From positions 124,001 to 188,000 of the IMG/VR virus record IMGVR_UViG_3300035698_013060: a DNA stretch of 64,000 nt. The stretch is one strand, 5' to 3'. The notes beneath the pieces are model-generated. The model saw only the letters and a program-made list of their open reading frames with translations, was not told where the DNA came from and did not search any database. The position numbers and the translations under genes are program-made. Within the stretch, counting starts at the first letter, position 1, and each line of letters opens with the position of its first letter. Positions 5,246 to 62,917 of this stretch are shown here, piece by piece.

Positions 5246-5257
5246 CAATGGCATGTT
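5246..5257 (-). promoter_or_regulatory. late promoter AACA-TGCCAT-TG
   Basis: AACA-N6-TG in the intergenic gap. Confidence 0.7.
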
Positions 5258-5263
5258 CTACTC

Positions 5264-5722
5264 TCAATCGTCCTTGGGGAAGCTGATTACCTCACCCCTG
5301 AGCTCAATGGGTTGATGGACTCCCCTGACCTTTCTGATCATGGTAATTTTTCCATCTACTACTCCATAGACCTCTTTCCAAACCTCGTCTGGTGCAGACT
5401 TGGAAGGGATAGAGCAAAATACCATGTCACTTCTGATCCGCCTGATAATCTCGATCTCGTTGGAGCCTTCGAGAAGTTTCACTGATACGATAGATTCTCT
5501 TTCATTTGAGATGAGTGATGCTGCCATGGTAGCAGCGTGTCTTGGCTCAACTTTAACGACACCTTCCTGAGTTTCTGTTTTCATAATTCTTAGGTTCTCC
5601 CTTGCGATTTCTCCCACCGTACTACGTTTTATCCTTTCCACAAGCTGGACGTATCCGTCCATGCTGAGTTCATCACCTGAGTTGTGGTAGGTATCAAAGC
5701 TGACGGTAAGTCTTTCTTTCAT
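5264..5722 (-). CDS. hypothetical protein (152 aa)
   Basis: ATGA overlap with the primase stop. Confidence 0.7.
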   Translation of the reverse strand: MKERLTVSFDTYHNSGDELSMDGYVQLVERIKRSTVGEIARENLRIMKTETQEGVVKVEPRHAATMAASLISNERESIVSVKLLEGSNEIEIIRRIRSDMVFCSIPSKSAPDEVWKEVYGVVDGKITMIRKVRGVHQPIELRGEVISFPKDD

Positions 5723-6741
5723 ACGATTGCTCTTCTGAGCTTGATCTCTTCTCGCTTCATACCGAAGTCCTTTCCGATCGAGTTGTAGTTAACCTCGATC
5801 TTTTCGTGTTTCAAGAGAGAGTCTTCTCTCTTGAGCCACCTGAAGAACGGTAGTCCAACCTCAGCGTCCGCGTAGAAGCGAACGTCTAGATTAAGGAAGC
5901 CCCTTGTCCTAACGGCTTTCAAGGCCGAAGCAAAGTACTTCCCACCGGCTGCTGCGAAGATTACGTCCCTTCTCTCCGCTAGATCGGGGAGTATGTGATA
6001 GGACACTCCGAGCAAATCCATGGCACCTTCAGTCATCACTAATATAACTCGTTCGGTCATGGCTTCAACCTCTTTTGGAACGGCAAAGAGGCTGTTGGAA
6101 AAGGGATCCTCACCATACAACATGCAGGCGTAGTATCTCTTCTTCCAATTTCCGGTTGTATCCCTGATTGCTAACTGTGAATGGTCTGATGAGAGGAATC
6201 CTATTCCTTCTCGAGCCAAACGCTTTATGGTTTTAGGTTCCTCCTCAAGTTTAAGCCCGTTCACCTTGATGAACCAGCCGATATCTGCGATTATACTGTA
6301 GTTCAGCCCTGCCTTGGATGGTGGAATACTGATACCTAACCTGTCCTCTACGTAGCCTAGCCTCCGGCAAGCGTCCCGATCCAGATGGATCGGGAGCTTT
6401 AACCGATGGAACCCTCCTCCAGTCTTCGGACGGAACTTTTTCCTAGCCCTAGATAGGTTGGCATGAGCCATCCTAAGGGCACCGTCATCGAAGCACCTGA
6501 GGTCTCTAACGAAGTCGGGGCTTACTGCCCCCTTCGCCTCACACCTCACGCACCTCCATATGAGGAACTCCGGGTTCTTCAACCGGATATTGAGGTGCGC
6601 ACTCATGGGGTTCTTCTGAGAATCCCCGCAATACGGGCATCTCACCGACGCGTTTCTACCACGCCGGTCCACATAGAGGACGTCGATCCTTTCTTTCAGC
6701 CTCTCCACGAAGCCATCGACGTCTTTTTGTTCCACGGTCAC
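5719..6741 (-). CDS. DNA primase (T4 gp61-like, Zn ribbon plus TOPRIM)
   Basis: RCPYCGDS...H...RCVRC; TEGAMD; YADAE; KDFG. Confidence 0.85.
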   Translation of the reverse strand: MTVEQKDVDGFVERLKERIDVLYVDRRGRNASVRCPYCGDSQKNPMSAHLNIRLKNPEFLIWRCVRCEAKGAVSPDFVRDLRCFDDGALRMAHANLSRARKKFRPKTGGGFHRLKLPIHLDRDACRRLGYVEDRLGISIPPSKAGLNYSIIADIGWFIKVNGLKLEEEPKTIKRLAREGIGFLSSDHSQLAIRDTTGNWKKRYYACMLYGEDPFSNSLFAVPKEVEAMTERVILVMTEGAMDLLGVSYHILPDLAERRDVIFAAAGGKYFASALKAVRTRGFLNLDVRFYADAEVGLPFFRWLKREDSLLKHEKIEVNYNSIGKDFGMKREEIKLRRAIV

Positions 6742-6751
6742 TCCTCGCGCT

Positions 6752-6763
6752 CAATGTCATGTT
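6752..6763 (-). promoter_or_regulatory. late/middle promoter AACA-TGACAT-TG
   Basis: AACA-N6-TG in the 25-nt gap directly before the primase SD. Confidence 0.7.
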
Positions 6764-6766
6764 CGC

Positions 6767-8248
6767 TCAGATGCTTTCCACCAGCTTGAGTACCTCATCC
6801 GTTATCCGGTTTATGGGGTAAGTATTGATATCTTTCGCCGGAACTTCAATCTCGCCCATCTCTTGCTCGTAGCTGGGTAACTCGACCGATGTGTTCACGA
6901 AGATAGTCGAAATAAGCTTGGCCAACACATTGTTACGCGACAGGTTCCCTAACGCATAACGGTACTTGACCTCTGAGAGGTACTTATACGATTGGGAACC
7001 TAAAAGACCGTTCACGAAGTCCTTCGTAGAAACGATTCGGCGCTCCAGGTCTATACCATCCGGGAACGTCGTAGTAACCCACCGGGACAGGAACTCGAAC
7101 CCGTTCGCTCGAAGCCACTTCTTAAAGAACACCAACAGAATGGCATACTCGCCGAACCTAAGGTTATACATGGAGTGGTATCGTCCGACCCTCTTCGCAA
7201 AGAACAGGAACATCAGGTTTGTCTGGACGGTGTTAACCTGGACACCATCCTTGTAATACTCCACTTCTTCTTGGGTGATCTGGATCTTAGGGTGCCTGAG
7301 ACACGATACGATCAAGTCTGACAGTCTGGCTTCCGTGACCAGAGATGCGCTTTCATCAAGCCGGGCCAGTTGGAACTCAAGTCTCTCGAAGTTCGTAAGG
7401 CGTTCGTTCTGTGGGTCCGTTACCTCATACAGATTCTGAGGACGGTAGGTCAGGGCAAAGTTCGCCTTGAACTGATACTGTAGAAGGTTTTTCAACGTCA
7501 CGTGGAGATAACTCACCACAGGCCGCGTCGGTTCTAACTTCGGAATGATGTCGATCATCAACTTCCTGAAGAACTGCGAACTAATGATGTTGGGATCCAC
7601 TGCCATGTTCAACAGTAGGTTCCACATCGTCTTGTCAGAGTACCTTGTAGTACGAACCCGAGAAGACACGATCTTGAAGATCTTGTCCTTGATGTTGACC
7701 CCATCACGGTCTACAGCCTCAAAGCATGGTTCGAAGCACAGTAAGAAGAGTCGATCGTTGCGCCCGTGGCCCCTCTTGGACAGATACTCCGTGATCAACG
7801 GAACCAAAACCTTCATTAGGAAAGAGGCTTTCAGAACGATCTTCGAGTGTTCATCAGTAAACTGAAGCTCGACATTCGCCTTCTTCCTCTTTCTAGTCCC
7901 TTCGCCAGCCGGGACATAGACTTTGTCAATGAACTCTTCAGCTGCATCCTTGCACTCCCATACAAGTTTCCGGCAGTCCCGAGCTAGATCTTCTTCAGAG
8001 TACTCCGGATAACTTTCAATCCGGTGACGAATGCACATGAATTCAATGCCCGCCATCTCCGACTTGTCAAACGATACCTGTATGGATTCCTTGATTCTTC
8101 CTGCACACTCAGGCTTGGCGTATGACCTCTTCTTAGTGAGGCTCATGGTGTCAAACCGATCATCCCCCAACTTATGAATCTCGTTAAAGTTAATGAGAAT
8201 TGATTTCGCATCCTCATCTAATTCGCATACTAGTTTCATACCCTTCAT
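6767..8248 (-). CDS. non-virion RNA polymerase promoter-specificity (sigma-like) subunit, AR9 gp226 / phiKZ gp68 family (493 aa)
   Basis: blocks KKRSY, KKANVELQFTD..KIVLKASFLMKVLVP, KIFKIVSSRV..TRYSD..W, IIPKL...VVSYL, EVLKLV are collinear with AR9 gp226 as I recall it; start moved to ATG 8248 (GGAG/AAGGA SD). Confidence 0.85.
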   Translation of the reverse strand: MKGMKLVCELDEDAKSILINFNEIHKLGDDRFDTMSLTKKRSYAKPECAGRIKESIQVSFDKSEMAGIEFMCIRHRIESYPEYSEEDLARDCRKLVWECKDAAEEFIDKVYVPAGEGTRKRKKANVELQFTDEHSKIVLKASFLMKVLVPLITEYLSKRGHGRNDRLFLLCFEPCFEAVDRDGVNIKDKIFKIVSSRVRTTRYSDKTMWNLLLNMAVDPNIISSQFFRKLMIDIIPKLEPTRPVVSYLHVTLKNLLQYQFKANFALTYRPQNLYEVTDPQNERLTNFERLEFQLARLDESASLVTEARLSDLIVSCLRHPKIQITQEEVEYYKDGVQVNTVQTNLMFLFFAKRVGRYHSMYNLRFGEYAILLVFFKKWLRANGFEFLSRWVTTTFPDGIDLERRIVSTKDFVNGLLGSQSYKYLSEVKYRYALGNLSRNNVLAKLISTIFVNTSVELPSYEQEMGEIEVPAKDINTYPINRITDEVLKLVESI

Positions 8249-8305
8249 ATCCTTCTCTCCCTTCTGCGTTCGGTTATTGTCAAGGGCAATGCTGCCGCTA
8301 GCCCC

Positions 8306-8317
8306 TAATATATGCTC
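8306..8317 (-). promoter_or_regulatory. early promoter GAGCATATATTA
   Basis: TATATTA core about 60 nt upstream of the gp226 homologue. Confidence 0.7.
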
Positions 8318-9095
8318 ACCTACTCCGACGTTTCCCTGTTGAAGATTTAGCCTTCCTCGTAGATTTAGCTTTCCTCGTAGTTGACTTTGACACTCGCTTG
8401 GCAGGCCGAGCCGCCTTAGCCCTCTTTGCAGTCCCAGAAGGTCTTTCCCTTTGGATTCGTTTCTTAGCAGCCTCCCGATCCTTCGTTTTCTTTCTCTCAG
8501 CTGCCTCAATCTTGACCACTCGTTCGTACTTCCTGAAGATTGTCTCGAAGTCTTCTACAGTCTTCGAGACCTCCTTCTCTTTCAGTTCTTGTTTATCCTC
8601 ATGTTTGATAGTGTGAAGCCTGGCATGGAGAATGTACGTAGCAGCGAAGAAGAATGATTTATCAAAACCAAAGATTGCACTCGGGTTTGCAACAACTGGC
8701 TTCTGCTCGTACATCTCCTTGTCGAACTTGTCCTTCAACCACTCGATCAAGAACCAGCCTTTGTTAGCCACATAAGCGTGACCACTAAAGACAAAGGCGG
8801 GGTTGTTGCTAAAGAGTCTCACGTCAGAGTCCATGAGGGACTTCTTGGTTCCGGTTGCCCGAGCCTCGATTAGAACGTCCCACCAGAACCGCTTCTTCTC
8901 CAGAGTCTCAGAAGGGACTTGGATATAGAAGAGGGTAAGATCATCTGTCCTATAGACAGCAGCTCTGAACCTTTTACCAACCTTGATCATCTCCCCGAAC
9001 CGTCGGTTCAGATCATCAATGATTCGGTACCGAGCTGCCGTATGAGCAGTCCCCGGCCCGGTTGGGTTGGTCATGAGCTCTTTCAGCGTAGGCAT
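8316..9095 (-). CDS. conserved jumbo-phage hypothetical protein with Lys/Arg-rich tail
   Basis: GGAG SD; lies between gp226-like and chaperonin genes; tail STTRKAKSTRKAKS encoded by an 18-nt duplication. Confidence 0.8.
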   Translation of the reverse strand: MPTLKELMTNPTGPGTAHTAARYRIIDDLNRRFGEMIKVGKRFRAAVYRTDDLTLFYIQVPSETLEKKRFWWDVLIEARATGTKKSLMDSDVRLFSNNPAFVFSGHAYVANKGWFLIEWLKDKFDKEMYEQKPVVANPSAIFGFDKSFFFAATYILHARLHTIKHEDKQELKEKEVSKTVEDFETIFRKYERVVKIEAAERKKTKDREAAKKRIQRERPSGTAKRAKAARPAKRVSKSTTRKAKSTRKAKSSTGKRRSR

Positions 9096-9114
9096 CTCTA
9101 GCCTCCATGTCTAG

Positions 9115-10821
9115 TCAGAAAGGTCCAGCATTTCCGACAGTTCCTACGAACGATCCTGAGGACATGAACCGAGTACTTCCGGCCAGGAGACCGACAATAC
9201 TGACAGCCGTTCTCAGAGTCTCTATGTCTGCTTCGGTCGAACTGACGACCTTCGTTTCGTTGGCGGGTTCGAAATCCCCAGTGACCACGTTGTAAACCTC
9301 TTCGGAGTCAGTACACCTCTTGATGATCTCAGTACACTCAATTTCTCCGATTCCAGCATTCGCCATGATTCTGGCCACAACCTTGGTATAGGCTGTACCA
9401 ATAGCATGAAGGATTGAAGGACTACATCCTTTCTGGATTTCAGATTCAGGGACTTTGTCACCATCGCCGTAGATTCTGCTGATAATCTGCAGGACTCCCA
9501 TGCAGCAACCTGGAACGATCCCGCTCCGAGCAGCACTTTGCACTGCGAAGACAGCGTCCTCTACCAGGAAGGACGTAGTCCGACGCTCCTGAGGAGAATC
9601 TCCACCGACGAAGATGGTGATCATACCACTCTCACTCAGTCCAGAGAATCGGCGTTTGAGTCTCACCAGCTCTTCGATATTGTCCTTGACTTGATCTTCC
9701 TCGATATCCTTCAAAGCTTCCAAGATGAGAGCATGCCTCTCTTTGGCTGCATCGAAAGACTCAGGGGACATCCCGGAGAACAGAGATTTGTTCTCTTCGA
9801 TAGTGACCTCACCGACAACTCCCAAGAGCATATCGATCGTCTCGACGCTTTGGAATAGATCTTGAAGAGTAGCGTGTTCGTTGATGTCGAACGGAGTCGA
9901 TGACGTAAAAGCTACGAGATCATCGAACACCTCTCTGGCGTGGGGAGACTCGACAGCGATGTCCAACGGACAGATCACCAGCTTTTCCTGGAACTGAGCT
10001 TTGTTCTTGTATAGAAATGAGAAGAACATCTCGTCAAAAGCTGGAGCCATAATGACAAGGGCTTGGTTGGAAGCCATGCAGTGCTGCAAGAGTGGGCTGA
10101 ACATCCGAACATCGTCAGCCGTGAGCTTCTCTCTCGACATAAAGATACGGACGGCTCCGGCCGCTTTAAACTTCTCGCGGTTCTGATCGTTGGCGAAAGA
10201 GTGATGCATCATACCCCTGGGATGCTCGATACCACTCGACTCCTTGATAGAAGAGGATGGACCTGTAGCCTCCTTGACTGTGATAACTCCATGCCCACCA
10301 GACTTACTGAAGGCATCAGCAACGATAGTTCCGATTACCGGGTCGTTGTTGGCAGAGATCGTAGCAACATCCTTCAGGATTTCCTGGAATACTACGTCAG
10401 TGTATTCCCCTTTGGTGTTGTGCAGATTCACGATCTCGGAACACAGAAACTCCGAGGTCTGTTTCATCTCCCGTAGAGTGGCAGCATTGCAACCACCACT
10501 TTCAAGAAGGCTCTTGAGTAGATCAGCGGCTACCAAGACTGCTGTCGTTGTCCCATCTCCGACTGTCCTATTCAACCTGGAGGAAACCCTCTGAAGGAAA
10601 CCGAGGATTGTCCGGTCCAGCTCATTGTTGAACGCCATCTTACTCAGAACGGTATACCCGTCCTTGGTGCAGAAGTGCTGAAGCATTTGGTCCTGAATCA
10701 GGACATTACCACCACCCGGGCCGAGAGTTGCCCCTACTGCATCAGTCACATCATTCAGGACCATCACGATCCTCTCGGCTGTCTCTTCCTGCCCCAGCAG
10801 GTTGCTGTTTTTCTCTGGCAT
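9115..10821 (-). CDS. groEL: phage GroEL-like chaperonin
   Basis: TLGPGG, TKDGYTV, GDGTTT, ISANND, VGG, VEDA..A..GIVPG; no GGM tail. Confidence 0.93.
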   Translation of the reverse strand: MPEKNSNLLGQEETAERIVMVLNDVTDAVGATLGPGGGNVLIQDQMLQHFCTKDGYTVLSKMAFNNELDRTILGFLQRVSSRLNRTVGDGTTTAVLVAADLLKSLLESGGCNAATLREMKQTSEFLCSEIVNLHNTKGEYTDVVFQEILKDVATISANNDPVIGTIVADAFSKSGGHGVITVKEATGPSSSIKESSGIEHPRGMMHHSFANDQNREKFKAAGAVRIFMSREKLTADDVRMFSPLLQHCMASNQALVIMAPAFDEMFFSFLYKNKAQFQEKLVICPLDIAVESPHAREVFDDLVAFTSSTPFDINEHATLQDLFQSVETIDMLLGVVGEVTIEENKSLFSGMSPESFDAAKERHALILEALKDIEEDQVKDNIEELVRLKRRFSGLSESGMITIFVGGDSPQERRTTSFLVEDAVFAVQSAARSGIVPGCCMGVLQIISRIYGDGDKVPESEIQKGCSPSILHAIGTAYTKVVARIMANAGIGEIECTEIIKRCTDSEEVYNVVTGDFEPANETKVVSSTEADIETLRTAVSIVGLLAGSTRFMSSGSFVGTVGNAGPF

Positions 10822-11626: not shown

Positions 11627-13161
11627 TACGTCGTCTGATTGTCGCTTGTTGAAGGCGTCGAGGTCTGCTCCATCCGAAAAACCAATAGCCGCTCAATGTC
11701 GATATTGATGTCTCCGATGTCCTCTTTACACGAAGGACATGGCATAGCCTTGAGACGGTGAGAAACTGAGTACTCACTTTCCTTCTCGTTGATGCATCTG
11801 TTCAATTCATCAGCATCTTCGGAAGGAAGATCACAGACAACCCTGAACTTCTCAGCCCAGTCTTCGAGAGGGGCGAACACGGGTTTTCCGGTCCTCCTGA
11901 TTGCTTCGATGTTGGGCAGGAACACGTCCTTAATATATATCATCGAACCAAAGGTCTCCCTCTGGCCTTTGATATTACTTGCACTGGTGTAGAAGCCAAG
12001 CATGTTCAAGTGGTCTTGAAGACTGGCCGTACGGACATCGATGACCACTTTGGACTTCGGGAGGATGATTCTTTTCGTCCTGTGGACCAGTGAACGCCCA
12101 AGGAGTTCCATGGGCTTGATCTGGGACTTAATGACCTCATCGATCCACGCAAAGATGGCATCGTCATGTACTTTGATGAACGACGCGGGTTTGACCTTCA
12201 CTTGCACCGGCCTGTGACACTTACCACATGTTACTGTGAATTCAGTGTCGCCTGGATAGGTCTGACAGAAGATGCCAAAGAGAAGCGTATCGAGGTCATC
12301 GAAGGCCGTGACCTTCAAGAACTCAGTAAACGTCATTTCACCAACACTGCAAGGGCCGATCTTGTCATGGACGGTGGAGTAGAACCGCTTCCGCTCATTG
12401 AGTGGGTCAGCACTACTGTTTCGTAGGACATCCTTGTCTTTGAACGTCAACCCTTTCATTCCAGCTGAGTAAGCCGAACGCAGAGCGATCACTTGGTATG
12501 TTGCATCGGTTTCGAGAGCGGTCTGAGCAAACTTGTTCCGTTGAATCAGGTTCGCTTCCTGGATGTCCAGCTGACTCAGATCTACTACGAGAGAATCGAG
12601 GATTTCTCTGTCAGGATTCGGGATAGAATCCCCACCTGATTTCTTTTCAGAGTCCTTCTTCTCTTGGGCTTGTTGATTGGCTGTATCGTATGCAGCTTCC
12701 AAGAAGTTAGGAGTCCCTTCCGGAGCCTTAACGATCTTTTCAGGCTCGGGTGCCAATTCCAGTACCGGAGTAGTATCTTTCAGTCTTTCATCGGATTTAA
12801 CTACCACTTCTGGCTCTCCCTTTTTCGGTTCGATTTTTGTCCCTGGACCAGTCTCTACATCAATCACTGGACCAGTCTCTACAGTAGTCTCTATACCGGT
12901 CTCTACGACAGTTCCTGATTCCGGAAGGTCTTCAACCACTGAATCTCTCAGAGATGCTTCAGCCCGGGCCCTCGCAGTTTCCATCGGGTTGACAGCAGCC
13001 TCTCCATCTTCAGGGTACTGTACTGTACTCGAAGATTCGGCTCTGGCCTTAACCTCTAATTCCTTGCGCGTCTTCTCGAGTTTCTTCCGATCAACCGGAG
13101 GCTTGCGTCTCATTGGGGCTTCTTCGGAGGATCCTTGAGTGTTACTTGCTTCGTTTGCCAT
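11626..13161 (-). CDS. baseplate hub/tail assembly chaperone (T4 gp26/gp51-like or gpG-like)
   Basis: GLTFKD..L, D.D.LLFGI, VTCGKC and CPSC Zn ribbons; long acidic N-terminus; GGGAG SD at ATG 13161. Confidence 0.65.
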   Translation of the reverse strand: MANEASNTQGSSEEAPMRRKPPVDRKKLEKTRKELEVKARAESSSTVQYPEDGEAAVNPMETARARAEASLRDSVVEDLPESGTVVETGIETTVETGPVIDVETGPGTKIEPKKGEPEVVVKSDERLKDTTPVLELAPEPEKIVKAPEGTPNFLEAAYDTANQQAQEKKDSEKKSGGDSIPNPDREILDSLVVDLSQLDIQEANLIQRNKFAQTALETDATYQVIALRSAYSAGMKGLTFKDKDVLRNSSADPLNERKRFYSTVHDKIGPCSVGEMTFTEFLKVTAFDDLDTLLFGIFCQTYPGDTEFTVTCGKCHRPVQVKVKPASFIKVHDDAIFAWIDEVIKSQIKPMELLGRSLVHRTKRIILPKSKVVIDVRTASLQDHLNMLGFYTSASNIKGQRETFGSMIYIKDVFLPNIEAIRRTGKPVFAPLEDWAEKFRVVCDLPSEDADELNRCINEKESEYSVSHRLKAMPCPSCKEDIGDINIDIERLLVFRMEQTSTPSTSDNQTT

Positions 13162-13197
13162 GTCGGAGTATCTCCCGTTTTTCAGTTGGATTCTTCG

Positions 13198-13210
13198 CAA
13201 TTACCATGTT
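13198..13210 (-). promoter_or_regulatory. late promoter variant AACA-TGGTAAT-TG
   Basis: N7 spacing variant upstream of ATG 13161. Confidence 0.45.
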
Positions 13211-13228
13211 CCGCGTGGGATTTCCGCG

Positions 13229-13660
13229 CTAAACGAAGAACTCACCGTGAGTCGTTCCGTCGTCTTCTTTGAAGACTTGGTATATGATCGCCTTTACGCC
13301 ATCGAGGGCTTTCTGTAAAGTTATCACTACATTAAGGACGCTGGTGGCTCTCTCGATTGTCTCAGCCTCAGCCTTCGCTACCGTTACCTTTTCGATGAGG
13401 ATATCAGGTAGATATTCTCTCAACTGAGTCGAGATCCTAAGCTCAAGCCTAGCGATGAGTCCGTCGTCTAAGATCTCGAATAGGTAAGTTCCAATACCAA
13501 CCCCCATGTCGAAATTATCGACACAAGTTCCTGGTTCCATCAGCAATAGCACTTGAGCTCTGGCTGCTATAGCCTGAAGCCCACTGTGATATGCACTTCG
13601 CCTGAAGCTGTCGATTGACAATCTCAGCTCCGGCATGACTTTCGTCCTGTCTCCGGCCAT
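13229..13660 (-). CDS. baseplate wedge protein, gp25-like
   Basis: LLLMEPG..V...DMGVGIGTYLFE...I..QL..YLP pattern. Confidence 0.75.
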   Translation of the reverse strand: MAGDRTKVMPELRLSIDSFRRSAYHSGLQAIAARAQVLLLMEPGTCVDNFDMGVGIGTYLFEILDDGLIARLELRISTQLREYLPDILIEKVTVAKAEAETIERATSVLNVVITLQKALDGVKAIIYQVFKEDDGTTHGEFFV

Positions 13661-13701
13661 GTCACTTGGCTCCTTTTGAATAATTCCCGGATCTATGTTG
13701 C

Positions 13702-13713
13702 CAATGTTCTGTT
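13702..13713 (-). promoter_or_regulatory. late promoter AACA-GAACAT-TG
   Basis: leftward member of a divergent pair. Confidence 0.65.
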
Positions 13714-13783
13714 ACCCGCATGCGAGAAAGCTCCGGAATGAGGGCCTGGTCTCAGCGAAGAAACGCCATTCCATAGAGTCAGC

Positions 13784-13848: not shown

Positions 13849-14580
13849 ATGAGTAGACCTAGAAAATGCCCACTTTGTCGTTCGAAGTTTGTGTCGCAAT
13901 CGACCCTGGAAGGGCACCTCCGAAAGCATCACGAAAAAGAGCTTGGAGGAATGAGCCCCGCTAGGTACATCTTCAATATCAGGAATAACAAGACCCGTGG
14001 TACCTGCATCATCTGTGGTAAAGAGTCAGAATTCAACGAACATACCAAGAAGTACAATAGGCTCTGTAACAGACCGATGTGCCGAGAGCGGTACATCAAG
14101 ATGTTCCGTGAGAGAATGCAACGGAAGTACGGGAAGACCCATCTTTTGGACGATCCTGATGTTCAGAAGAAGATGCTAGCTCGCAGAGGAATTTCTGGTG
14201 AGTATGGTTGGAGTGACGGAACTCCAATGACATTTACTGGACAGTATGAAGAGGAGTTTCTCAAGTACTGTGATATCTTCCTGAACCTTCCGAGTGCTGA
14301 CGTCATCGCCCCATGTCCCTTCCCTGTGGAGTACAACCACGGCGGGAAGAAGCATATCTACCTTGCTGACTTCTTCTTTCCTTCTCTTGATCTGGTCATC
14401 GAAATCAAGGCCACTGATAACAAGGGATACAGAGAGAGGGACATTGAAACTGAGAGGGTTAAAGACAAAGCCATGGTCATGAGCAATCACCATTACTTGA
14501 AAGTGGCTGACAAGAACTATGACGAGTTCTTAGAGGGTCTTATAGAAGGGCGTTGGACTAAGAAGAAATTCAAGAAGTAG
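13849..14580 (+). CDS. C2H2 zinc finger plus PD-(D/E)XK nuclease (TnsA-N / T4 gp4 head-completion-like)
   Basis: CPLC..F.....L..H...H; CIIC..C..C; YLADFF...VIEIK. Confidence 0.8.
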   Translation: MSRPRKCPLCRSKFVSQSTLEGHLRKHHEKELGGMSPARYIFNIRNNKTRGTCIICGKESEFNEHTKKYNRLCNRPMCRERYIKMFRERMQRKYGKTHLLDDPDVQKKMLARRGISGEYGWSDGTPMTFTGQYEEEFLKYCDIFLNLPSADVIAPCPFPVEYNHGGKKHIYLADFFFPSLDLVIEIKATDNKGYRERDIETERVKDKAMVMSNHHYLKVADKNYDEFLEGLIEGRWTKKKFKK

Positions 14581-42252: not shown

Positions 42253-42264
42253 CAATAGGATGTT
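42253..42264 (-). promoter_or_regulatory. late promoter AACA-TCCTAT-TG (tape measure)
   Basis: strict match; back-to-back with 42275. Confidence 0.75.
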
Positions 42265-61095: not shown

Positions 61096-61395
61096 CTATC
61101 CTCCAGTAATTACAGTTCCAGCTCCTGTTACTACGTTGCCGATGAAACACCCTACGAAGAGATCTCCTATTCGACAAACGTTACTCCCTTCAGCTATGAC
61201 TGTAGAAGAGCCGGTGACCATGATCCCGACATGCCCACAGAATCCGAGCATAACATCTCCGATCCTAGATGTAGGCATCCCCTCAGCAATCACTGTTCCA
61301 GCTCCAGTTACGAGCACACCGACCATCCCTATGCAGCTCTTATGACAGCAGCAGACGCCGACACCGAGATCGGATATTCTTGCCGTTGGTGGCAT
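61096..61395 (-). CDS. PAAR-repeat spike-tip protein (gp5.4-like)
   Basis: three repeats PTARISD / PTSRIGD / VCRIGD with TG..TV..EG; Cys/His metal site. Confidence 0.9.
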   Translation of the reverse strand: MPPTARISDLGVGVCCCHKSCIGMVGVLVTGAGTVIAEGMPTSRIGDVMLGFCGHVGIMVTGSSTVIAEGSNVCRIGDLFVGCFIGNVVTGAGTVITGG

Positions 61396-62555
61396 CAGTT
61401 ATCCTCTTTTTCTTCAGTGTTTACAACGCAGAACCTTATCTCCCCCTTCTTCCTTCCACTTTTCTCGAAATTCAGTATTCTATTGACTACTGTTTCATAA
61501 CCCCAAGTTCCAATCCCAGTCTCTCTACTGACCTTCCCGATCTCATCTAGGGTTCTCTTAGCAGCGTCTAGAGTTTTTGGAGTCCATCCGTCACCACACG
61601 GATCCAACCTTCCGAGACCGTTTTCTTCGAGCCACGGACCTCTGTAAGGTGCAAAGCACACTGACTTCATTCCGTTCTTAGCACCCCACCTCATAAGGTC
61701 TGGCCCATCCGTCAACGTCTCGGTTGTGATAAGACTTCCAAGAAAGATCCCGTGATTGGGGTCCCTGCGAAAGATTTCTTCCAGATTCCCCTTGACTATA
61801 CTAAGATCTTTCAGTCTGTGAGTCTTGTAATGTTCAGGGTCTACGGTATCAAGACTCACGGATATCCTTGTTAGAGGACCATTCCTCACCCATTTCTCCC
61901 ACTTCTCTGGAGTCATCCCGATCCCATTAGTAATCGTCATTATCTCGGTCCCCGGATTGGGAAGATCCAAGACTTTTTTGATATAGGAGTCAGGATGAGC
62001 AAAGAGGTCCCCACCCATGAACTGTGTGTACCTCACATTCTTGAATACCGGTTTCAGCTTCTCAAAGTTCTTATCGTTCAGTTGATTCTTGACGTTAGGA
62101 ATGTAAGTGGACCAACAGAAAGGACACGCTGTGTTACACTTGCGTCCTATGAAAAGGAAAACCATGAGAGGCTGTGTATCGATCTTTGATTTTCCAGAGA
62201 GAATACTCTTCTCTATCTCATCGATCTCTGGACAATTTTTAAATCTCTTACGAAGTAAGTCCATTTGCTCTTTGACCGTTTGTCCGTTACCTCTACATAT
62301 CGGACAAGACATCTCAACAGGACAGGCTTTCTTGTATCCAACTGCCAACATCTTCTCACGAAACTTGACGAACCCTTCACAATTCCATTGTACTTCACCG
62401 CTGTACGGACCACCCTCTAGGTATTCGTGCTTAACTAGATCAGGAACGTAACAGCAGGGACTGACTCCCCATCCACCAATTCCAAGATATGTCCATGGGT
62501 CAACACAGATGTCTCTCCTCAAACTGAGATCTTCAGTACTTGCTTCGTTAATCAT
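61395..62555 (-). CDS. radical SAM enzyme with N-terminal SPASM/twitch-like domain
   Basis: CNTACPFC, MGGD, TNG, ISVSLD; N-terminal CVDPW...VSPCC...WN...FR...C....CPIC. Confidence 0.9.
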   Translation of the reverse strand: MINEASTEDLSLRRDICVDPWTYLGIGGWGVSPCCYVPDLVKHEYLEGGPYSGEVQWNCEGFVKFREKMLAVGYKKACPVEMSCPICRGNGQTVKEQMDLLRKRFKNCPEIDEIEKSILSGKSKIDTQPLMVFLFIGRKCNTACPFCWSTYIPNVKNQLNDKNFEKLKPVFKNVRYTQFMGGDLFAHPDSYIKKVLDLPNPGTEIMTITNGIGMTPEKWEKWVRNGPLTRISVSLDTVDPEHYKTHRLKDLSIVKGNLEEIFRRDPNHGIFLGSLITTETLTDGPDLMRWGAKNGMKSVCFAPYRGPWLEENGLGRLDPCGDGWTPKTLDAAKRTLDEIGKVSRETGIGTWGYETVVNRILNFEKSGRKKGEIRFCVVNTEEKEDN

Positions 62556-62917
62556 TTTATTTCATGACTTTTATCGTAGTCTTCTTTGCACACTGGAAGC
62601 ATGTCTACAGTCTTCCCAGCGAATTTATGAGTACAGTCGCTAAGAAACCTGACCTTCCCATTCTCGATGAAGCAGTGACACCTCATCAACTCTTCTCCCC
62701 TGGATTGGCTCAAGAGAGAAGGACTGAGTGTCGGCTTATCAAGAGACTCATTCCAAAACCAACACGGTCCTTTGCTCTCTTTCTTTCCAGTATGGAAAGG
62801 TACCACGCACAATCCGACCCATCCCTGAAGACGGATCCTGATATGAGATGCCTCTGGAATAGGGCACTCTACATATGCATGGTCTAGCAGTTTTACAGGC
62901 TGTGCTAATTTGATCAT
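62552..62917 (-). CDS. DUF6527-like protein
   Basis: W.WN...DKPTLSPS.L...CH.FI.NG.V.FLSDCTH..AG.TVD. Confidence 0.75.
   Translation of the reverse strand: MIKLAQPVKLLDHAYVECPIPEASHIRIRLQGWVGLCVVPFHTGKKESKGPCWFWNESLDKPTLSPSLLSQSRGEELMRCHCFIENGKVRFLSDCTHKFAGKTVDMLPVCKEDYDKSHEIK

What the first reader, a model, noticed from the sequence alone, without database searches (positions are those of the whole stretch)
6767..8248. AR9 gp226-type sigma-like subunit with an apparently conserved deoxyuridine-reading pocket in a non-AT-rich jumbo phage
Seen: a 493-aa ORF with the blocks TRYSDKTMW (T codon at 7628-7630) and VVSYL (7508-7513). Established, from my recall of the AR9 nvRNAP structure and not re-checked: AR9 gp226 reads dU in the template strand of AACA promoters; V206 in YSDVVIW excludes the thymine methyl (V206G relaxes this), and S245/Y246 help melt DNA. 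Here the aligned residues are Thr (beta-branched, isosteric with Val) and S-Y. Inference: this lineage may carry uracil-DNA, or it shows how the reader adapted to thymine. Known uracil-DNA jumbo phages are very AT-rich, whereas this window looks near 45-50% GC by eye.
Basis: partly seen in the sequence, partly recalled or inferred. Interest (0 to 1): 0.8.

Follow-up and report, generated by a model that had tools for sequence, protein, structure and literature searches.

The report
AR9-type phage RNA polymerase specificity subunit
This gene encodes the promoter-recognition subunit of a giant phage's own RNA polymerase, of the type that reads uracil in DNA in Bacillus phage AR9, and the complete genome of this salt-lake phage (48% GC) carries the matching promoters and thymine-depleting enzymes, so it probably also has uracil-DNA, which has not been measured.

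Summary
Window 6767-8248 (-) is a 493-aa ORF that matches AR9 gp226 (PDB 7S01_A) at E 3.8e-37 over 90% of its length. An AlphaFold model has 7S01_A as its top Foldseek hit. AR9 V206 aligns to Thr207 and S245/Y246 are kept, but I207 is Met and Y210 is Leu.

I rebuilt the whole genome from overlapping public contigs: circular, 241,049 bp, 48.4% GC, from salt-lake metagenomes. It carries both AR9 promoter classes. AACA-N4-ATT-G/A has the spacing of AR9's late consensus AACA-(6N)-U-A/G. An ATATTA early-type motif sits upstream of this gene, as in AR9.

The genome also encodes an ortholog of the experimentally proven PBS1/AR9 dTMP phosphatase. In GenBank phages that protein occurs in 19 records, all from the dU-type jumbo phage groups that carry gp226. 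There is a dCMP/dCTP-deaminase-family protein and no detectable ThyA, ThyX or dUTPase.

The gene is a true gp226 ortholog (about 0.9). Uracil-DNA is likely (about 0.65) but unproven.

The "critical valine" is not conserved in this clade (A/P/S/T/V/Y) and is valine in only 77 of 139 aligned family members. This is a new member of a known kind, notable mainly for its GC content.

The parts
6767..8248 (-). CDS of the gp226-type promoter-specificity (sigma-like) subunit of the non-virion RNA polymerase, 493 aa
   Evidence: PDB 7S01_A E 3.8e-37. PHROG 25005 'RNA polymerase' E 4.7e-47. AF2 model pLDDT 87.4, top Foldseek hits 7S01_A at E 2.7e-18 and phiKZ gp68 (8QUE_B) at E 3.8e-7.
7622..7648 (-). 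Helix 2.1bis motif TRYSDKTMW, equivalent to AR9 TKYSDVVIW, which forms the -10 base pocket
   Evidence: Ungapped alignment. T201, S204, D205 and W209 are at least 90% conserved in 54 homologs. Coordinates verified.
7628..7630 (-). Codon ACG for Thr207, aligned to AR9 Val206, the residue whose side chain excludes the thymine methyl
   Evidence: structural role from PMC9209446. The sequence is identical in the contigs of the two public runs that cover the codon (X1, X3).
7508..7513 (-). Ser246-Tyr247, equivalent to AR9 S245/Y246 (non-template strand groove, needed on double-stranded templates)
   Evidence: function from PMC9209446.
8304..8317 (-). Early-type promoter candidate GAGCATATATTAGG (core ATATTA at 8306-8311), between the gp227-like gene and this gene
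   Evidence: Sequence verified. AR9 has an annotated early promoter in the same gap between g227 and g226. The consensus of 25 AR9 early promoters is AAATATATATTAT. ATATTA occurs 30 times in intergenic DNA against 4.5 expected. The extended form ACNNATATTA occurs 6 times in the window against 0.70 expected; this site has G-C where that pattern has A-C and is not among the 6.
6753..6763 (-). Late-type promoter motif AACATGACATT, followed by G, just downstream of this gene's stop and upstream of the primase gene
   Evidence: It belongs to the AACA-N4-ATT-G/A class.
8316..9095 (-). gp227-like gene (phrog_20045), upstream neighbour as in AR9
   Evidence: AR9 gene order is g228 GroEL, g227, g226, g225 primase.
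5719..6741 (-). DNA primase gene, downstream neighbour as in AR9 (g225)
   Evidence: PHROG 19847 E 4.3e-45. tblastn to AR9 g225 E 1e-29.
9115..10821 (-). GroEL-like chaperonin, syntenic with AR9 g228
42254..42264 (-). Late-type promoter AACATCCTATT, followed by G, upstream of the tape-measure gene. It is one of 10 intergenic, sense-oriented instances in the window; the others start at 5247, 13703, 13784, 19354, 22010, 26734, 42275 and 51353, plus 6753 listed above.

Best explanation
The ORF encodes the fifth, promoter-specificity subunit of an AR9-type phage-encoded multisubunit RNA polymerase (the non-virion RNAP). By analogy with AR9, the gene is transcribed early from an ATATTA-type promoter by the virion-packaged RNAP. 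The protein then joins the split beta/beta' core. Its helix 2.1bis (TRYSDKTMW), together with the betaN subunit, captures the flipped bases of the template-strand element 3'-(U/T)(U/T)G(U/T)-5', the complement of AACA, about 10 nt upstream of the start site, and so switches on late genes. Shown here: homology, fold, synteny, presence of core-subunit homologs, and the existence and placement of an AACA-N6-T-G/A motif upstream of structural genes. Inferred: that this protein reads that motif, and that it does so in the template strand. The phage most likely has thymine replaced by uracil in its DNA (my estimate 0.65), so Thr207, like Val206 in AR9, would exclude a 5-methyl group and restrict late transcription to phage DNA.
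For: Homology and fold:
- PDB 7S01_A at E 3.8e-37 over 90% of the length.
- AF2 model pLDDT 87.4, top Foldseek hit 7S01_A at E 2.7e-18, then phiKZ gp68.

Synteny and core subunits:
- Gene order GroEL, gp227-like, gp226-like, primase, as in AR9.
- Homologs of AR9 nvRNAP betaN g105 (E 1e-88, R363 and N382 kept), betaC g089 and beta'C g154, and of the vRNAP subunits g145 and g189, are present; 49 ORFs in total hit the first 200 kb of AR9.

Promoters:
- AACA-N4-ATT occurs 49 times genome-wide. 27 of these lie in upstream-sense regions that make up 5.8% of strand-bases (2.8 expected, binomial p 5e-21).
- The 13 one-base variants of AACA tested give 0-6 each.
- The next base is mostly G or A, so the motif equals AR9's A(-11)ACA-(6N)-U-A/G(+1).
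- It precedes the capsid, protease, sheath, tape-measure, tail-fibre and vRNAP beta genes.
- The early-type ATATTA motif precedes this gene and the betaN, beta'C, DNA polymerase and RNR genes.

Evidence for dU:
- A reciprocal-best-hit, syntenic ortholog of AR9 g151 is present. The g151 termini match the cloning primers of the biochemically proven Dtm_PBS1 dTMP phosphatase. The DxD, K and DD motifs of the HAD (haloacid dehalogenase-type phosphatase) fold are invariant across six homologs.
- Homologs exist in only 19 of 50,697 GenBank phage records, all AR9/PBS1, S6-like, LPJP1 or phiR1-37.
- A dCMP_cyt_deam_1 protein is present at E 1e-23 and is the reciprocal best hit of AR9 g221.
- No ThyA, ThyX or dUTPase was found by precomputed Pfam, PHROGs, Pfam on 67 ORFs, or motif scans.
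- All 21 GenBank records with a gp226 homolog are known or presumed dU phages.
- In the gp226 tree the query is closer to AR9 (patristic distance 2.63) than phiR1-37 is to AR9 (3.12).
- GC-only 6-bp palindromes are depleted relative to A/T-containing ones (median O/E 0.62 vs 0.935, p 0.008), the pattern also seen in AR9.
Against: - The valine described as 'absolutely conserved' in dU phages is Thr here. It varies within the clade (A/P/S/T/V/Y), I207 is Met and Y210 is Leu, so U-versus-T discrimination cannot be assumed.
- betaN K375 aligns to Thr next to a gap.
- There is no Ugi homolog, including at the syntenic HU/betaN gap.
- The deaminase is of the bacterial ComEB / 2HVV type, which is common in thymine-DNA phages, and its substrate is unknown.
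- The substrate of the Dtm ortholog is untested. Its AF2 model failed (pLDDT 42), and neither Pfam nor PDB sequence profiles recognise the family.
- 48% GC is far from the AU-rich AR9 (72.25% AU, PMC5449584).
- The genome assembled completely from ordinary metagenome libraries, whereas dU-DNA of roseophage DSS3_VP1 failed Nextera library preparation (PMC8323127). The library chemistry here is not on record.
- Within the window alone the count of AACANNNNATT (12 vs 7.2 expected) is not significant; only its placement is.
Confidence: 0.8

Rival explanations
1. The phage has ordinary thymine DNA. Its gp226 ortholog has adapted to read 3'-TTGT-5', and the Dtm-like and deaminase genes serve general nucleotide salvage or pool balancing.
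For: Three pocket residues differ from AR9 (V206T, I207M, Y210L) and the Val206 column is unconstrained in this clade. GC is 48%. There is no Ugi homolog. The deaminase type is widespread in thymine-DNA phages. The genome was recovered completely from standard metagenome libraries in several samples.
Against: The only substitution shown to admit thymine is Gly, which removes the C-beta. Thr keeps the C-beta and a beta-branched side chain (PMC9209446). Exclusion of T at -11 comes from the DNA backbone, not from a side chain. A dTMP phosphatase ortholog found only in dU jumbo phages would work against a thymine-DNA phage that encodes no thymidylate synthase.
Confidence: 0.25
2. The DNA carries a different base modification, such as a hypermodified pyrimidine made from dUMP or an adenine modification, and the deaminase feeds that pathway.
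For: The closest phage deaminase hit is Bacillus phage SP-10, which from my own recall has hypermodified thymine. There is a weak Mom-family hit at E 6e-5. Three radical SAM proteins, a TylF-type methyltransferase and a glycosyltransferase are encoded.
Against: No ThyA-like dUMP hydroxymethylase and no other pyrimidine-modifying enzyme was detected. The Mom hit is weak. This reading does not explain the Dtm ortholog any better than dU does, and it is not exclusive of dU.
Confidence: 0.08
3. The ORF is a decayed or repurposed gp226 relic that no longer acts as a specificity factor.
For: None beyond the substitutions in helix 2.1bis.
Against: The ORF is full length and intact, the model is confident, and the near-invariant family residues are kept. 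It has an early-type promoter. The cognate promoter motif is maintained upstream of about 27 genes. The sequence is identical in four independent runs.
Confidence: 0.02

Closest known systems
Bacillus phage AR9 gp226 (PDB 7S01, 7UM0, 7UM1), promoter-specificity subunit of the non-virion RNAP
   Same: Same family and fold, similar length (493 vs 464 aa). Same gene neighbourhood (GroEL, gp227, gp226, primase). An early-type promoter lies upstream. The helix 2.1bis motif T-x-Y-S-D-x-x-x-W and the Ser-Tyr of the non-template groove are kept. The genome carries the same late-promoter architecture, AACA-(6N)-T-G/A.
   Different: Only about 26-27% identical. V206 is Thr, I207 is Met, Y210 is Leu, and F261/K262/Y263 are A/N/F. 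The genome is 48% GC rather than about 28%, has no Ugi homolog, and comes from a salt lake rather than from a Bacillus host.
Yersinia phage phiR1-37 g245, Staphylococcus phage S6 S6_1200 and Listeria phage LPJP1 gp226 homologs
   Same: Same family. These phages also carry the Dtm-like gene (phiR1-37 g177, S6_0540, LPJP1 gene 00124). In the gp226 tree the query is closer to AR9 than phiR1-37 is.
   Different: All four cultured lineages keep Val at the 206 position. The query clade, known only from metagenomes, does not.
Pseudomonas phage phiKZ gp68 (PDB 8QUE_B, 7OGR_B), fifth subunit of the phiKZ nvRNAP
   Same: Structurally related (Foldseek E 3.8e-7, TM about 0.54) and has the same role as a sigma-like fifth subunit.
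   Different: 14% identity over the structural alignment. phiKZ has thymine DNA (my own recall). phiKZ does not appear among the tblastn hits in GenBank phages.
Bacterial sigma-70 family factors
   Same: The functional analogy: a dissociable subunit that reads a -10-like element as flipped single-stranded bases and nucleates melting.
   Different: No detectable sequence similarity (no Pfam hit). The AR9-type factor reads the template strand rather than the non-template strand.
Dtm_PBS1 / AR9 g151 dTMP phosphatase and Dcd_PBS1 / AR9 g221 dCTP deaminase (PMC12697855)
   Same: The genome encodes reciprocal-best-hit homologs of both. The Dtm homolog is syntenic, two genes downstream of the DNA polymerase catalytic subunit, and keeps the invariant HAD catalytic motifs.
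   Different: 23% (Dtm) and 31% (Dcd) identity. The deaminase carries extra N- and C-terminal domains and is closer to bacterial ComEB-type dCMP deaminases. Neither activity has been tested.

Membership tests
AR9 gp226-type nvRNAP specificity subunit | Significant full-length sequence similarity to gp226 | tested here: met
   phmmer E 3.8e-37, residues 9-447 vs 9-432. PHROG 25005 E 4.7e-47. Reciprocal best hit.
AR9 gp226-type nvRNAP specificity subunit | Same three-dimensional fold | tested here: met
   AF2 pLDDT 87.4. Foldseek top hits 7S01_A at E 2.7e-18 (TM 0.56/0.59) and 7UM0_A. The high rmsd suggests that domain arrangement differs.
AR9 gp226-type nvRNAP specificity subunit | Helix 2.1bis motif T-x-Y-S-D-x-V-I-W | tested here: met
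   TRYSDKTMW. T, Y, S, D and W are kept.
AR9 gp226-type nvRNAP specificity subunit | 'Absolutely conserved' valine at the 206 position (stated for dU phages in PMC9209446) | tested here: not met
   Thr207 here. The clade shows A/P/P/S/T/T/V/V/Y. Across the family, Val is found in 77 of 139 aligned members. This feature defines the U-specific pocket, not the protein family.
AR9 gp226-type nvRNAP specificity subunit | Ser-Tyr of the non-template strand groove (S245/Y246) | tested here: met
   S246/Y247.
AR9 gp226-type nvRNAP specificity subunit | Cognate split beta/beta' core subunits in the same genome | tested here: met
   Homologs of AR9 g105, g089 and g154 (nvRNAP) and of g145 and g189 (vRNAP) are present. 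nvRNAP beta'N (AR9 g270 by my recall) was not tested because AR9 200-251 kb was not fetched.
AR9 gp226-type nvRNAP specificity subunit | Late promoters with AACA-(6N)-T/U-A/G upstream of late genes | tested here: met
   27 upstream-sense instances against 2.8 expected, with correct spacing and +1 purine.
AR9 gp226-type nvRNAP specificity subunit | Template-strand, uracil-dependent promoter recognition | not testable with these tools
   Needs in vitro transcription on dU and dT templates.
dU-DNA jumbo phages (AR9/PBS1, S6, LPJP1, phiR1-37 group) | dTMP- or dTTP-degrading enzyme (Dtm or Dtt) | tested here: met
   A 248-aa ortholog of AR9 g151 / Dtm_PBS1 with invariant catalytic motifs. Its GenBank distribution is confined to this phage group. 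Activity not tested.
dU-DNA jumbo phages (AR9/PBS1, S6, LPJP1, phiR1-37 group) | dCTP deaminase (Dcd) | tested here: inconclusive
   A PF00383 deaminase is present (E 1e-23) and is the reciprocal best hit of AR9 g221. It is of the ComEB / 2HVV type, and whether it acts on dCTP or dCMP is unknown.
dU-DNA jumbo phages (AR9/PBS1, S6, LPJP1, phiR1-37 group) | No phage thymidylate synthase or dUTPase | tested here: met
   None found by precomputed Pfam tables, PHROGs, Pfam on 67 ORFs, or motif scans of all six frames.
dU-DNA jumbo phages (AR9/PBS1, S6, LPJP1, phiR1-37 group) | Uracil-DNA glycosylase inhibitor (Ugi; annotated in AR9 as g104) | tested here: not met
   No blastp or tblastn hit, and no ORF was called in the syntenic HU/betaN gap. 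An unrelated inhibitor cannot be excluded.
dU-DNA jumbo phages (AR9/PBS1, S6, LPJP1, phiR1-37 group) | dU replaces dT in virion DNA | not testable with these tools
   Sequence reads do not distinguish U from T.

The most novel reading that the evidence does not exclude
This is the first non-AT-rich (48% GC), hypersaline-environment member of the uracil-DNA jumbo phages. It would show that complete dT-to-dU replacement and U-gated late transcription do not require an AU-rich genome. In that case the 'critical valine' of the uracil pocket could be replaced by Thr, Ser, Ala or Pro without loss of function. The more than 350 gp226 clusters seen in metagenomes would then mark a much larger hidden diversity of dU-DNA phages.
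Probability: 0.55. Interest if true: 0.6.

Novelty: new member of a known kind. Interest (0 to 1): 0.5.

Why it matters
The cultured phages with this transcription system come from a few host genera (Bacillus, Staphylococcus, Listeria, Yersinia). AR9, the best studied, is AU-rich, and the structural paper calls Val206 absolutely conserved among them. This genome is complete, 241 kb and 48% GC, and comes from salt lakes. It has the full AR9-type apparatus (two phage RNAPs, both promoter classes, a Dtm ortholog, a deaminase, no thymidylate synthase), but Thr sits at the key position and the residue varies in its clade.

If the DNA is dU, GC content could no longer be used to rule out dU-DNA phages. 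It would also give natural variants for testing what really sets U-versus-T discrimination. The family is large in metagenomes: 351 clusters at 50% identity with E up to 0.001. A paired gp226 plus Dtm signature could therefore be used to find candidate dU phages that standard library preparation may under-sample.

Tried and rejected
- Pfam on the ORF gave no family.
- Megablast of 25 kb of the window against GenBank phages gave no match, so no close cultured relative exists.
- One look-up of encoding contigs failed because my start codon differed from the recorded gene call.
- The AF2 model of the Dtm candidate, built from a 2-sequence alignment, had pLDDT 42. I discarded it and ran no fold search on it.
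- Pfam at E up to 10 does not recognise the Dtm candidate. Even AR9 g151 gets only a weak HAD hit at E 0.045.
- A 6-sequence Dtm profile has no significant PDB sequence hit. The top hit, a phosphatase from the HAD-fold FCP/SCP group, is insignificant (E 0.48) and matches on motif I only.
- The window-only shuffle test of AACANNNNATT was not significant (12 vs 7.2 expected), so I relied on placement and variant controls.
- No RNA runs were listed, so transcription start sites could not be mapped.
- Laying DNA contigs showed identical sequence in four runs but gave no information on base chemistry or library type.
- I considered a haloarchaeal host because of the Volactin hit and thought it less likely: the genome has Shine-Dalgarno-type motifs, HU, a peptidoglycan hydrolase and a GTA-type holin. 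I did not pursue it further.
- The last 51 kb of AR9 were not fetched, so AR9 g270 and other genes there were not compared.
Full report
OBSERVATION. The minus-strand ORF from ATG 8248 to the stop at 6767 encodes 493 aa. The longer TTG-initiated reading overlaps the upstream gene. JGI's gene call is the same 493 aa and ENA's is 490 aa. TRYSDKTMW is at 7622-7648, the Thr codon ACG at 7628-7630, and the Ser-Tyr of VVSYL at 7508-7513. The window is 48.6% GC with no AT-rich stretches at 4-kb resolution.

IDENTITY. Pfam finds nothing. PHROG 25005 ('RNA polymerase') matches at E 4.7e-47. The only significant PDB sequence hit is chain A of 7S01, 7UM0 and 7UM1, which is AR9 gp226, at E 3.8e-37 over residues 9-447. 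An AlphaFold2 model built on 54 homologs has mean pLDDT 87.4. Its best Foldseek hits in the PDB are 7S01_A (E 2.7e-18) and 7UM0_A, followed by the phiKZ fifth subunit gp68 (8QUE_B, E 3.8e-7). The neighbourhood matches AR9. The order is GroEL-like chaperonin 9115-10821, gp227-like 8316-9095, this gene, then DNA primase 5719-6741. AR9 has g228, g227, g226, g225 in the same order.

WHAT THE LITERATURE SAYS.
- The -10U base is wedged between gp226 I207 and betaN gp105 R363. It hydrogen-bonds to gp105 K375 and to the main-chain N of V206 and I207.
- Its C5 lies 3.9 A from the C-beta of V206.
- V206G makes U and T templates equivalent.
- T at -11 is excluded by the DNA backbone, not by a side chain.
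- Y210 stacks on -9G.
- Y246A and S245E impair transcription on double-stranded templates.
- The authors call the valine 'absolutely conserved' in close homologs from dU phages.

THE POCKET HERE. In the ungapped alignment V206 becomes T207, I207 becomes M208, and Y210 becomes L211. S245/Y246 are kept. F261/K262/Y263, which contact the DNA through main-chain atoms, become A/N/F. The betaN homolog (genome 120258-121757, E 1e-88 to AR9 g105) keeps R363 and N382. K375 falls next to a gap and aligns to Thr. The pocket is therefore recognisable but not identical.

An exhaustive HMMER search of 1.84 billion cluster representatives finds 351 relatives at E up to 0.001 and 235 at E up to 1e-10. In an alignment of 139 of them the 206 column holds V 77, T 10, I 9, K 8, P 6, G 6 and A 5. 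All four cultured lineages (AR9, phiR1-37, S6, LPJP1) have Val. The query's own clade has 9 members and support 0.998, and it reads A, P, P, S, T, T, V, V, Y. Thr is thus one of several residues tolerated in this clade, and none of those nine is Gly. Because the clash described for AR9 involves the C-beta, a Thr, like Val, should still crowd a 5-methyl group. That is an inference, not a test.

PROMOTERS. Upstream regions in the window showed two recurring motifs. To test them I needed the whole genome. The window is part of IMG/VR contig IMGVR_UViG_3300035698_013060 (241,176 bp) and of ENA contig k141_119043 (237,607 bp). Walking with exact-protein look-ups and tblastn-confirmed scans gave overlapping loci. 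They merged with zero mismatches into a circle of 241,049 bp and 48.4% GC.

The late-type motif:
- AACA-N4-ATT occurs 49 times genome-wide on both strands.
- 27 of these lie in sense orientation in upstream intergenic regions that make up 5.8% of strand-bases. The expectation is 2.8 and the binomial p is 5e-21.
- The 13 one-base variants of AACA that I tested give 0-6 in the same regions.
- The following base is usually G or A. The element therefore reads AACA-(6N)-T-G/A, which is AR9's late consensus A(-11)ACA-(6N)-U-A/G(+1) (PMC5449584), with extra conservation at -3 and -2.
- It precedes the major capsid, prohead protease, sheath, tape-measure, tail-fibre and virion-RNAP beta genes.
- In the window alone there are 12 matches. 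That count is not significant (7.2 expected), but 10 of the 12 are intergenic and sense to the next gene.

The early-type motif:
- ATATTA is the most enriched intergenic hexamer (30 vs 4.5 expected). The extended form ACNNATATTA occurs 6 times in the window against 0.70 expected.
- It matches the core of the 25 annotated AR9 early promoters that I collected, whose consensus is AAATATATATTAT.
- One copy (GAGCATATATTAGG, 8304-8317) lies between the gp227-like gene and this gene, where AR9 also has an annotated early promoter. This copy has G-C where the extended pattern has A-C, so it is not one of the 6 window matches.
- Other copies precede the betaN, beta'C, DNA polymerase and RNR genes.

The regulatory logic therefore looks like AR9's. 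Early genes, including the nvRNAP subunits, have vRNAP-type promoters. Late structural genes have AACA promoters.

IS THE DNA URACIL-DNA? Sequence cannot show this directly, so I tested gene content against the markers established biochemically in PMC12697855. Those markers are a dCTP deaminase (Dcd) plus a dTMP phosphatase (Dtm; PBS1, DSS3_VP1) or a dTTP pyrophosphatase (Dtt; phiR1-37).

(a) Genome 163253-163999 (L024:15403-16149, 248 aa) is the reciprocal best hit of AR9 g151.
- The g151 N- and C-termini (MFSIKEP... and ...TEEKAV) match the cloning primers given for Dtm_PBS1, so g151 is the ortholog of the proven enzyme.
- The gene lies two genes downstream of the DNA polymerase catalytic subunit and just upstream of the vRNAP beta' gene. 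This matches the AR9 order g152, g151 ... g145.
- The DxD nucleophile motif, the conserved Lys, K-S-D and the acidic motif IV are invariant across six homologs.
- Among 50,697 GenBank phage records its homologs occur in only 19, all S6-like, LPJP1, phiR1-37 (g177) or PBS1/AR9. These are the same phage groups that carry gp226.

(b) Genome 150390-151382 (330 aa) carries a dCMP_cyt_deam_1 domain (E 1.2e-23) and is the reciprocal best hit of AR9 g221. It is nearer to bacterial ComEB-type enzymes (2HVV, E 5e-33) and to the deaminases of many thymine-DNA phages, so on its own it is neutral evidence.

(c) No ThyA, ThyX or dUTPase was found. I checked the precomputed Pfam tables of the fetched loci, PHROGs on 50 window ORFs, Pfam on the 67 ORFs of 100 aa or more in the otherwise unannotated 61 kb, and signature-motif scans of all six frames. 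The 200 kb of AR9 that I fetched show the same complement: RNR, deaminase and deoxyribonucleotidase, with no Thy or dUTPase annotated.

(d) GC-only 6-bp palindromes are more depleted than A/T-containing ones (median O/E 0.62 vs 0.935, one-sided Mann-Whitney p 0.008; GCCGGC 2 observed vs 19 expected). AR9 shows the same pattern in extreme form (GGCC 0 vs 44). This is what one expects if T-containing restriction sites are protected, but it is weak evidence.

(e) In the gp226 tree the query is closer to AR9 (patristic distance 2.63) than phiR1-37 is to AR9 (3.12). It therefore sits inside the diversity spanned by experimentally verified dU phages.

Evidence against dU:
- No Ugi homolog was found.
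- Pocket residues have diverged.
- The genome is 48% GC.
- It was recovered as a complete circle from ordinary metagenome libraries in several samples. dU-DNA of roseophage DSS3_VP1 failed Nextera library preparation (PMC8323127). The library type here is not on record.
- The enzymatic activities are inferred only. The AF2 model of the Dtm candidate failed (pLDDT 42), and neither Pfam nor PDB profiles recognise this divergent family.

I put uracil-DNA at about 0.65.

COMPARISON AND NOVELTY. The protein is a bona fide member of the gp226 family. The genome is an AR9-like jumbo phage with no close cultured relative: megablast finds nothing and the best protein identity is about 27%. Three things are new:
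- The setting: salt-lake metagenomes, at least 11 runs.
- The base composition.
- The finding that the 'critical valine' is replaceable in this clade.

None of this changes the known mechanism, so I rate it a new member of a known kind with moderate interest.

STATUS OF THE STEPS. Shown: homology, fold, synteny, presence and placement of the promoter motifs, gene content. Inferred: that this protein reads the AACA element in the template strand, that Thr207 excludes thymine, and that the DNA contains dU.

Noticed in passing
Genome outside the window, one ORF of alignment A2 (loci L028, L029, L031, L033; about 180-212 kb on the assembled circle): A strong Pfam Volactin hit (PF25216, E 6.4e-85), meaning an actin-like protein encoded by this jumbo phage. 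I did not identify which ORF carries it.
   Followed up: no
Same A2 set of ORFs (about 180-212 kb): A weak Mom-family hit (PF25680, E 6e-5) and a phosphoribosyltransferase domain. Together with the radical SAM, TylF-methyltransferase and glycosyltransferase genes elsewhere, these could point to an additional DNA or nucleotide modification.
   Followed up: no
L003:10001-11374 (just left of the window): A 457-aa fusion of SAICAR synthase and the AIR carboxylase/mutase domain (PurC-PurE), a purine-biosynthesis auxiliary gene.
   Followed up: no
L016:11201-12889: A 562-aa reverse transcriptase (RVT_1) inside the phage genome. It could belong to a group II intron, a diversity-generating element or a defence-type element; this was not resolved. 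A small RRM_1 protein lies a few kb upstream.
   Followed up: no
L008:1460-2638, 8420-9790 and 12526-13761: Three RCC1 / WD40_RLD repeat proteins flank a 750-aa class II-like ribonucleotide reductase gene. AR9 instead has class I NrdEF plus NrdI, placed next to its primase.
   Followed up: no
L021:6927-7919 (genome 150390-151382): The deaminase has an extra N-terminal region of about 100 aa and a Cys-rich C-terminal region of about 90 aa (weak B-box-like zinc-finger hits). This architecture is unusual for a dCMP/dCTP deaminase.
   Followed up: partly
Window 61395-62555 and L015:16555-17391: Radical SAM domain proteins of unknown role. The one in the window sits next to a BubE-family gene at 62552-62917.
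   Followed up: no
Whole genome: The assembled circle is 241,049 bp. The IMG/VR contig is 241,176 bp, so it appears to carry a terminal overlap. The ENA contig, at 237,607 bp, lacks about 3.4 kb. The phage sequence is identical in contigs from four salt-lake runs at low word depth (about 3-10).
   Followed up: partly
Window 13849-14580: An endonuclease gene (phrog_15137, weak homing-endonuclease similarity) with its own AACA-type motif upstream. AR9 carries many intron- or intein-type homing endonucleases inside its RNAP genes, whereas the RNAP genes here look uninterrupted.
   Followed up: no
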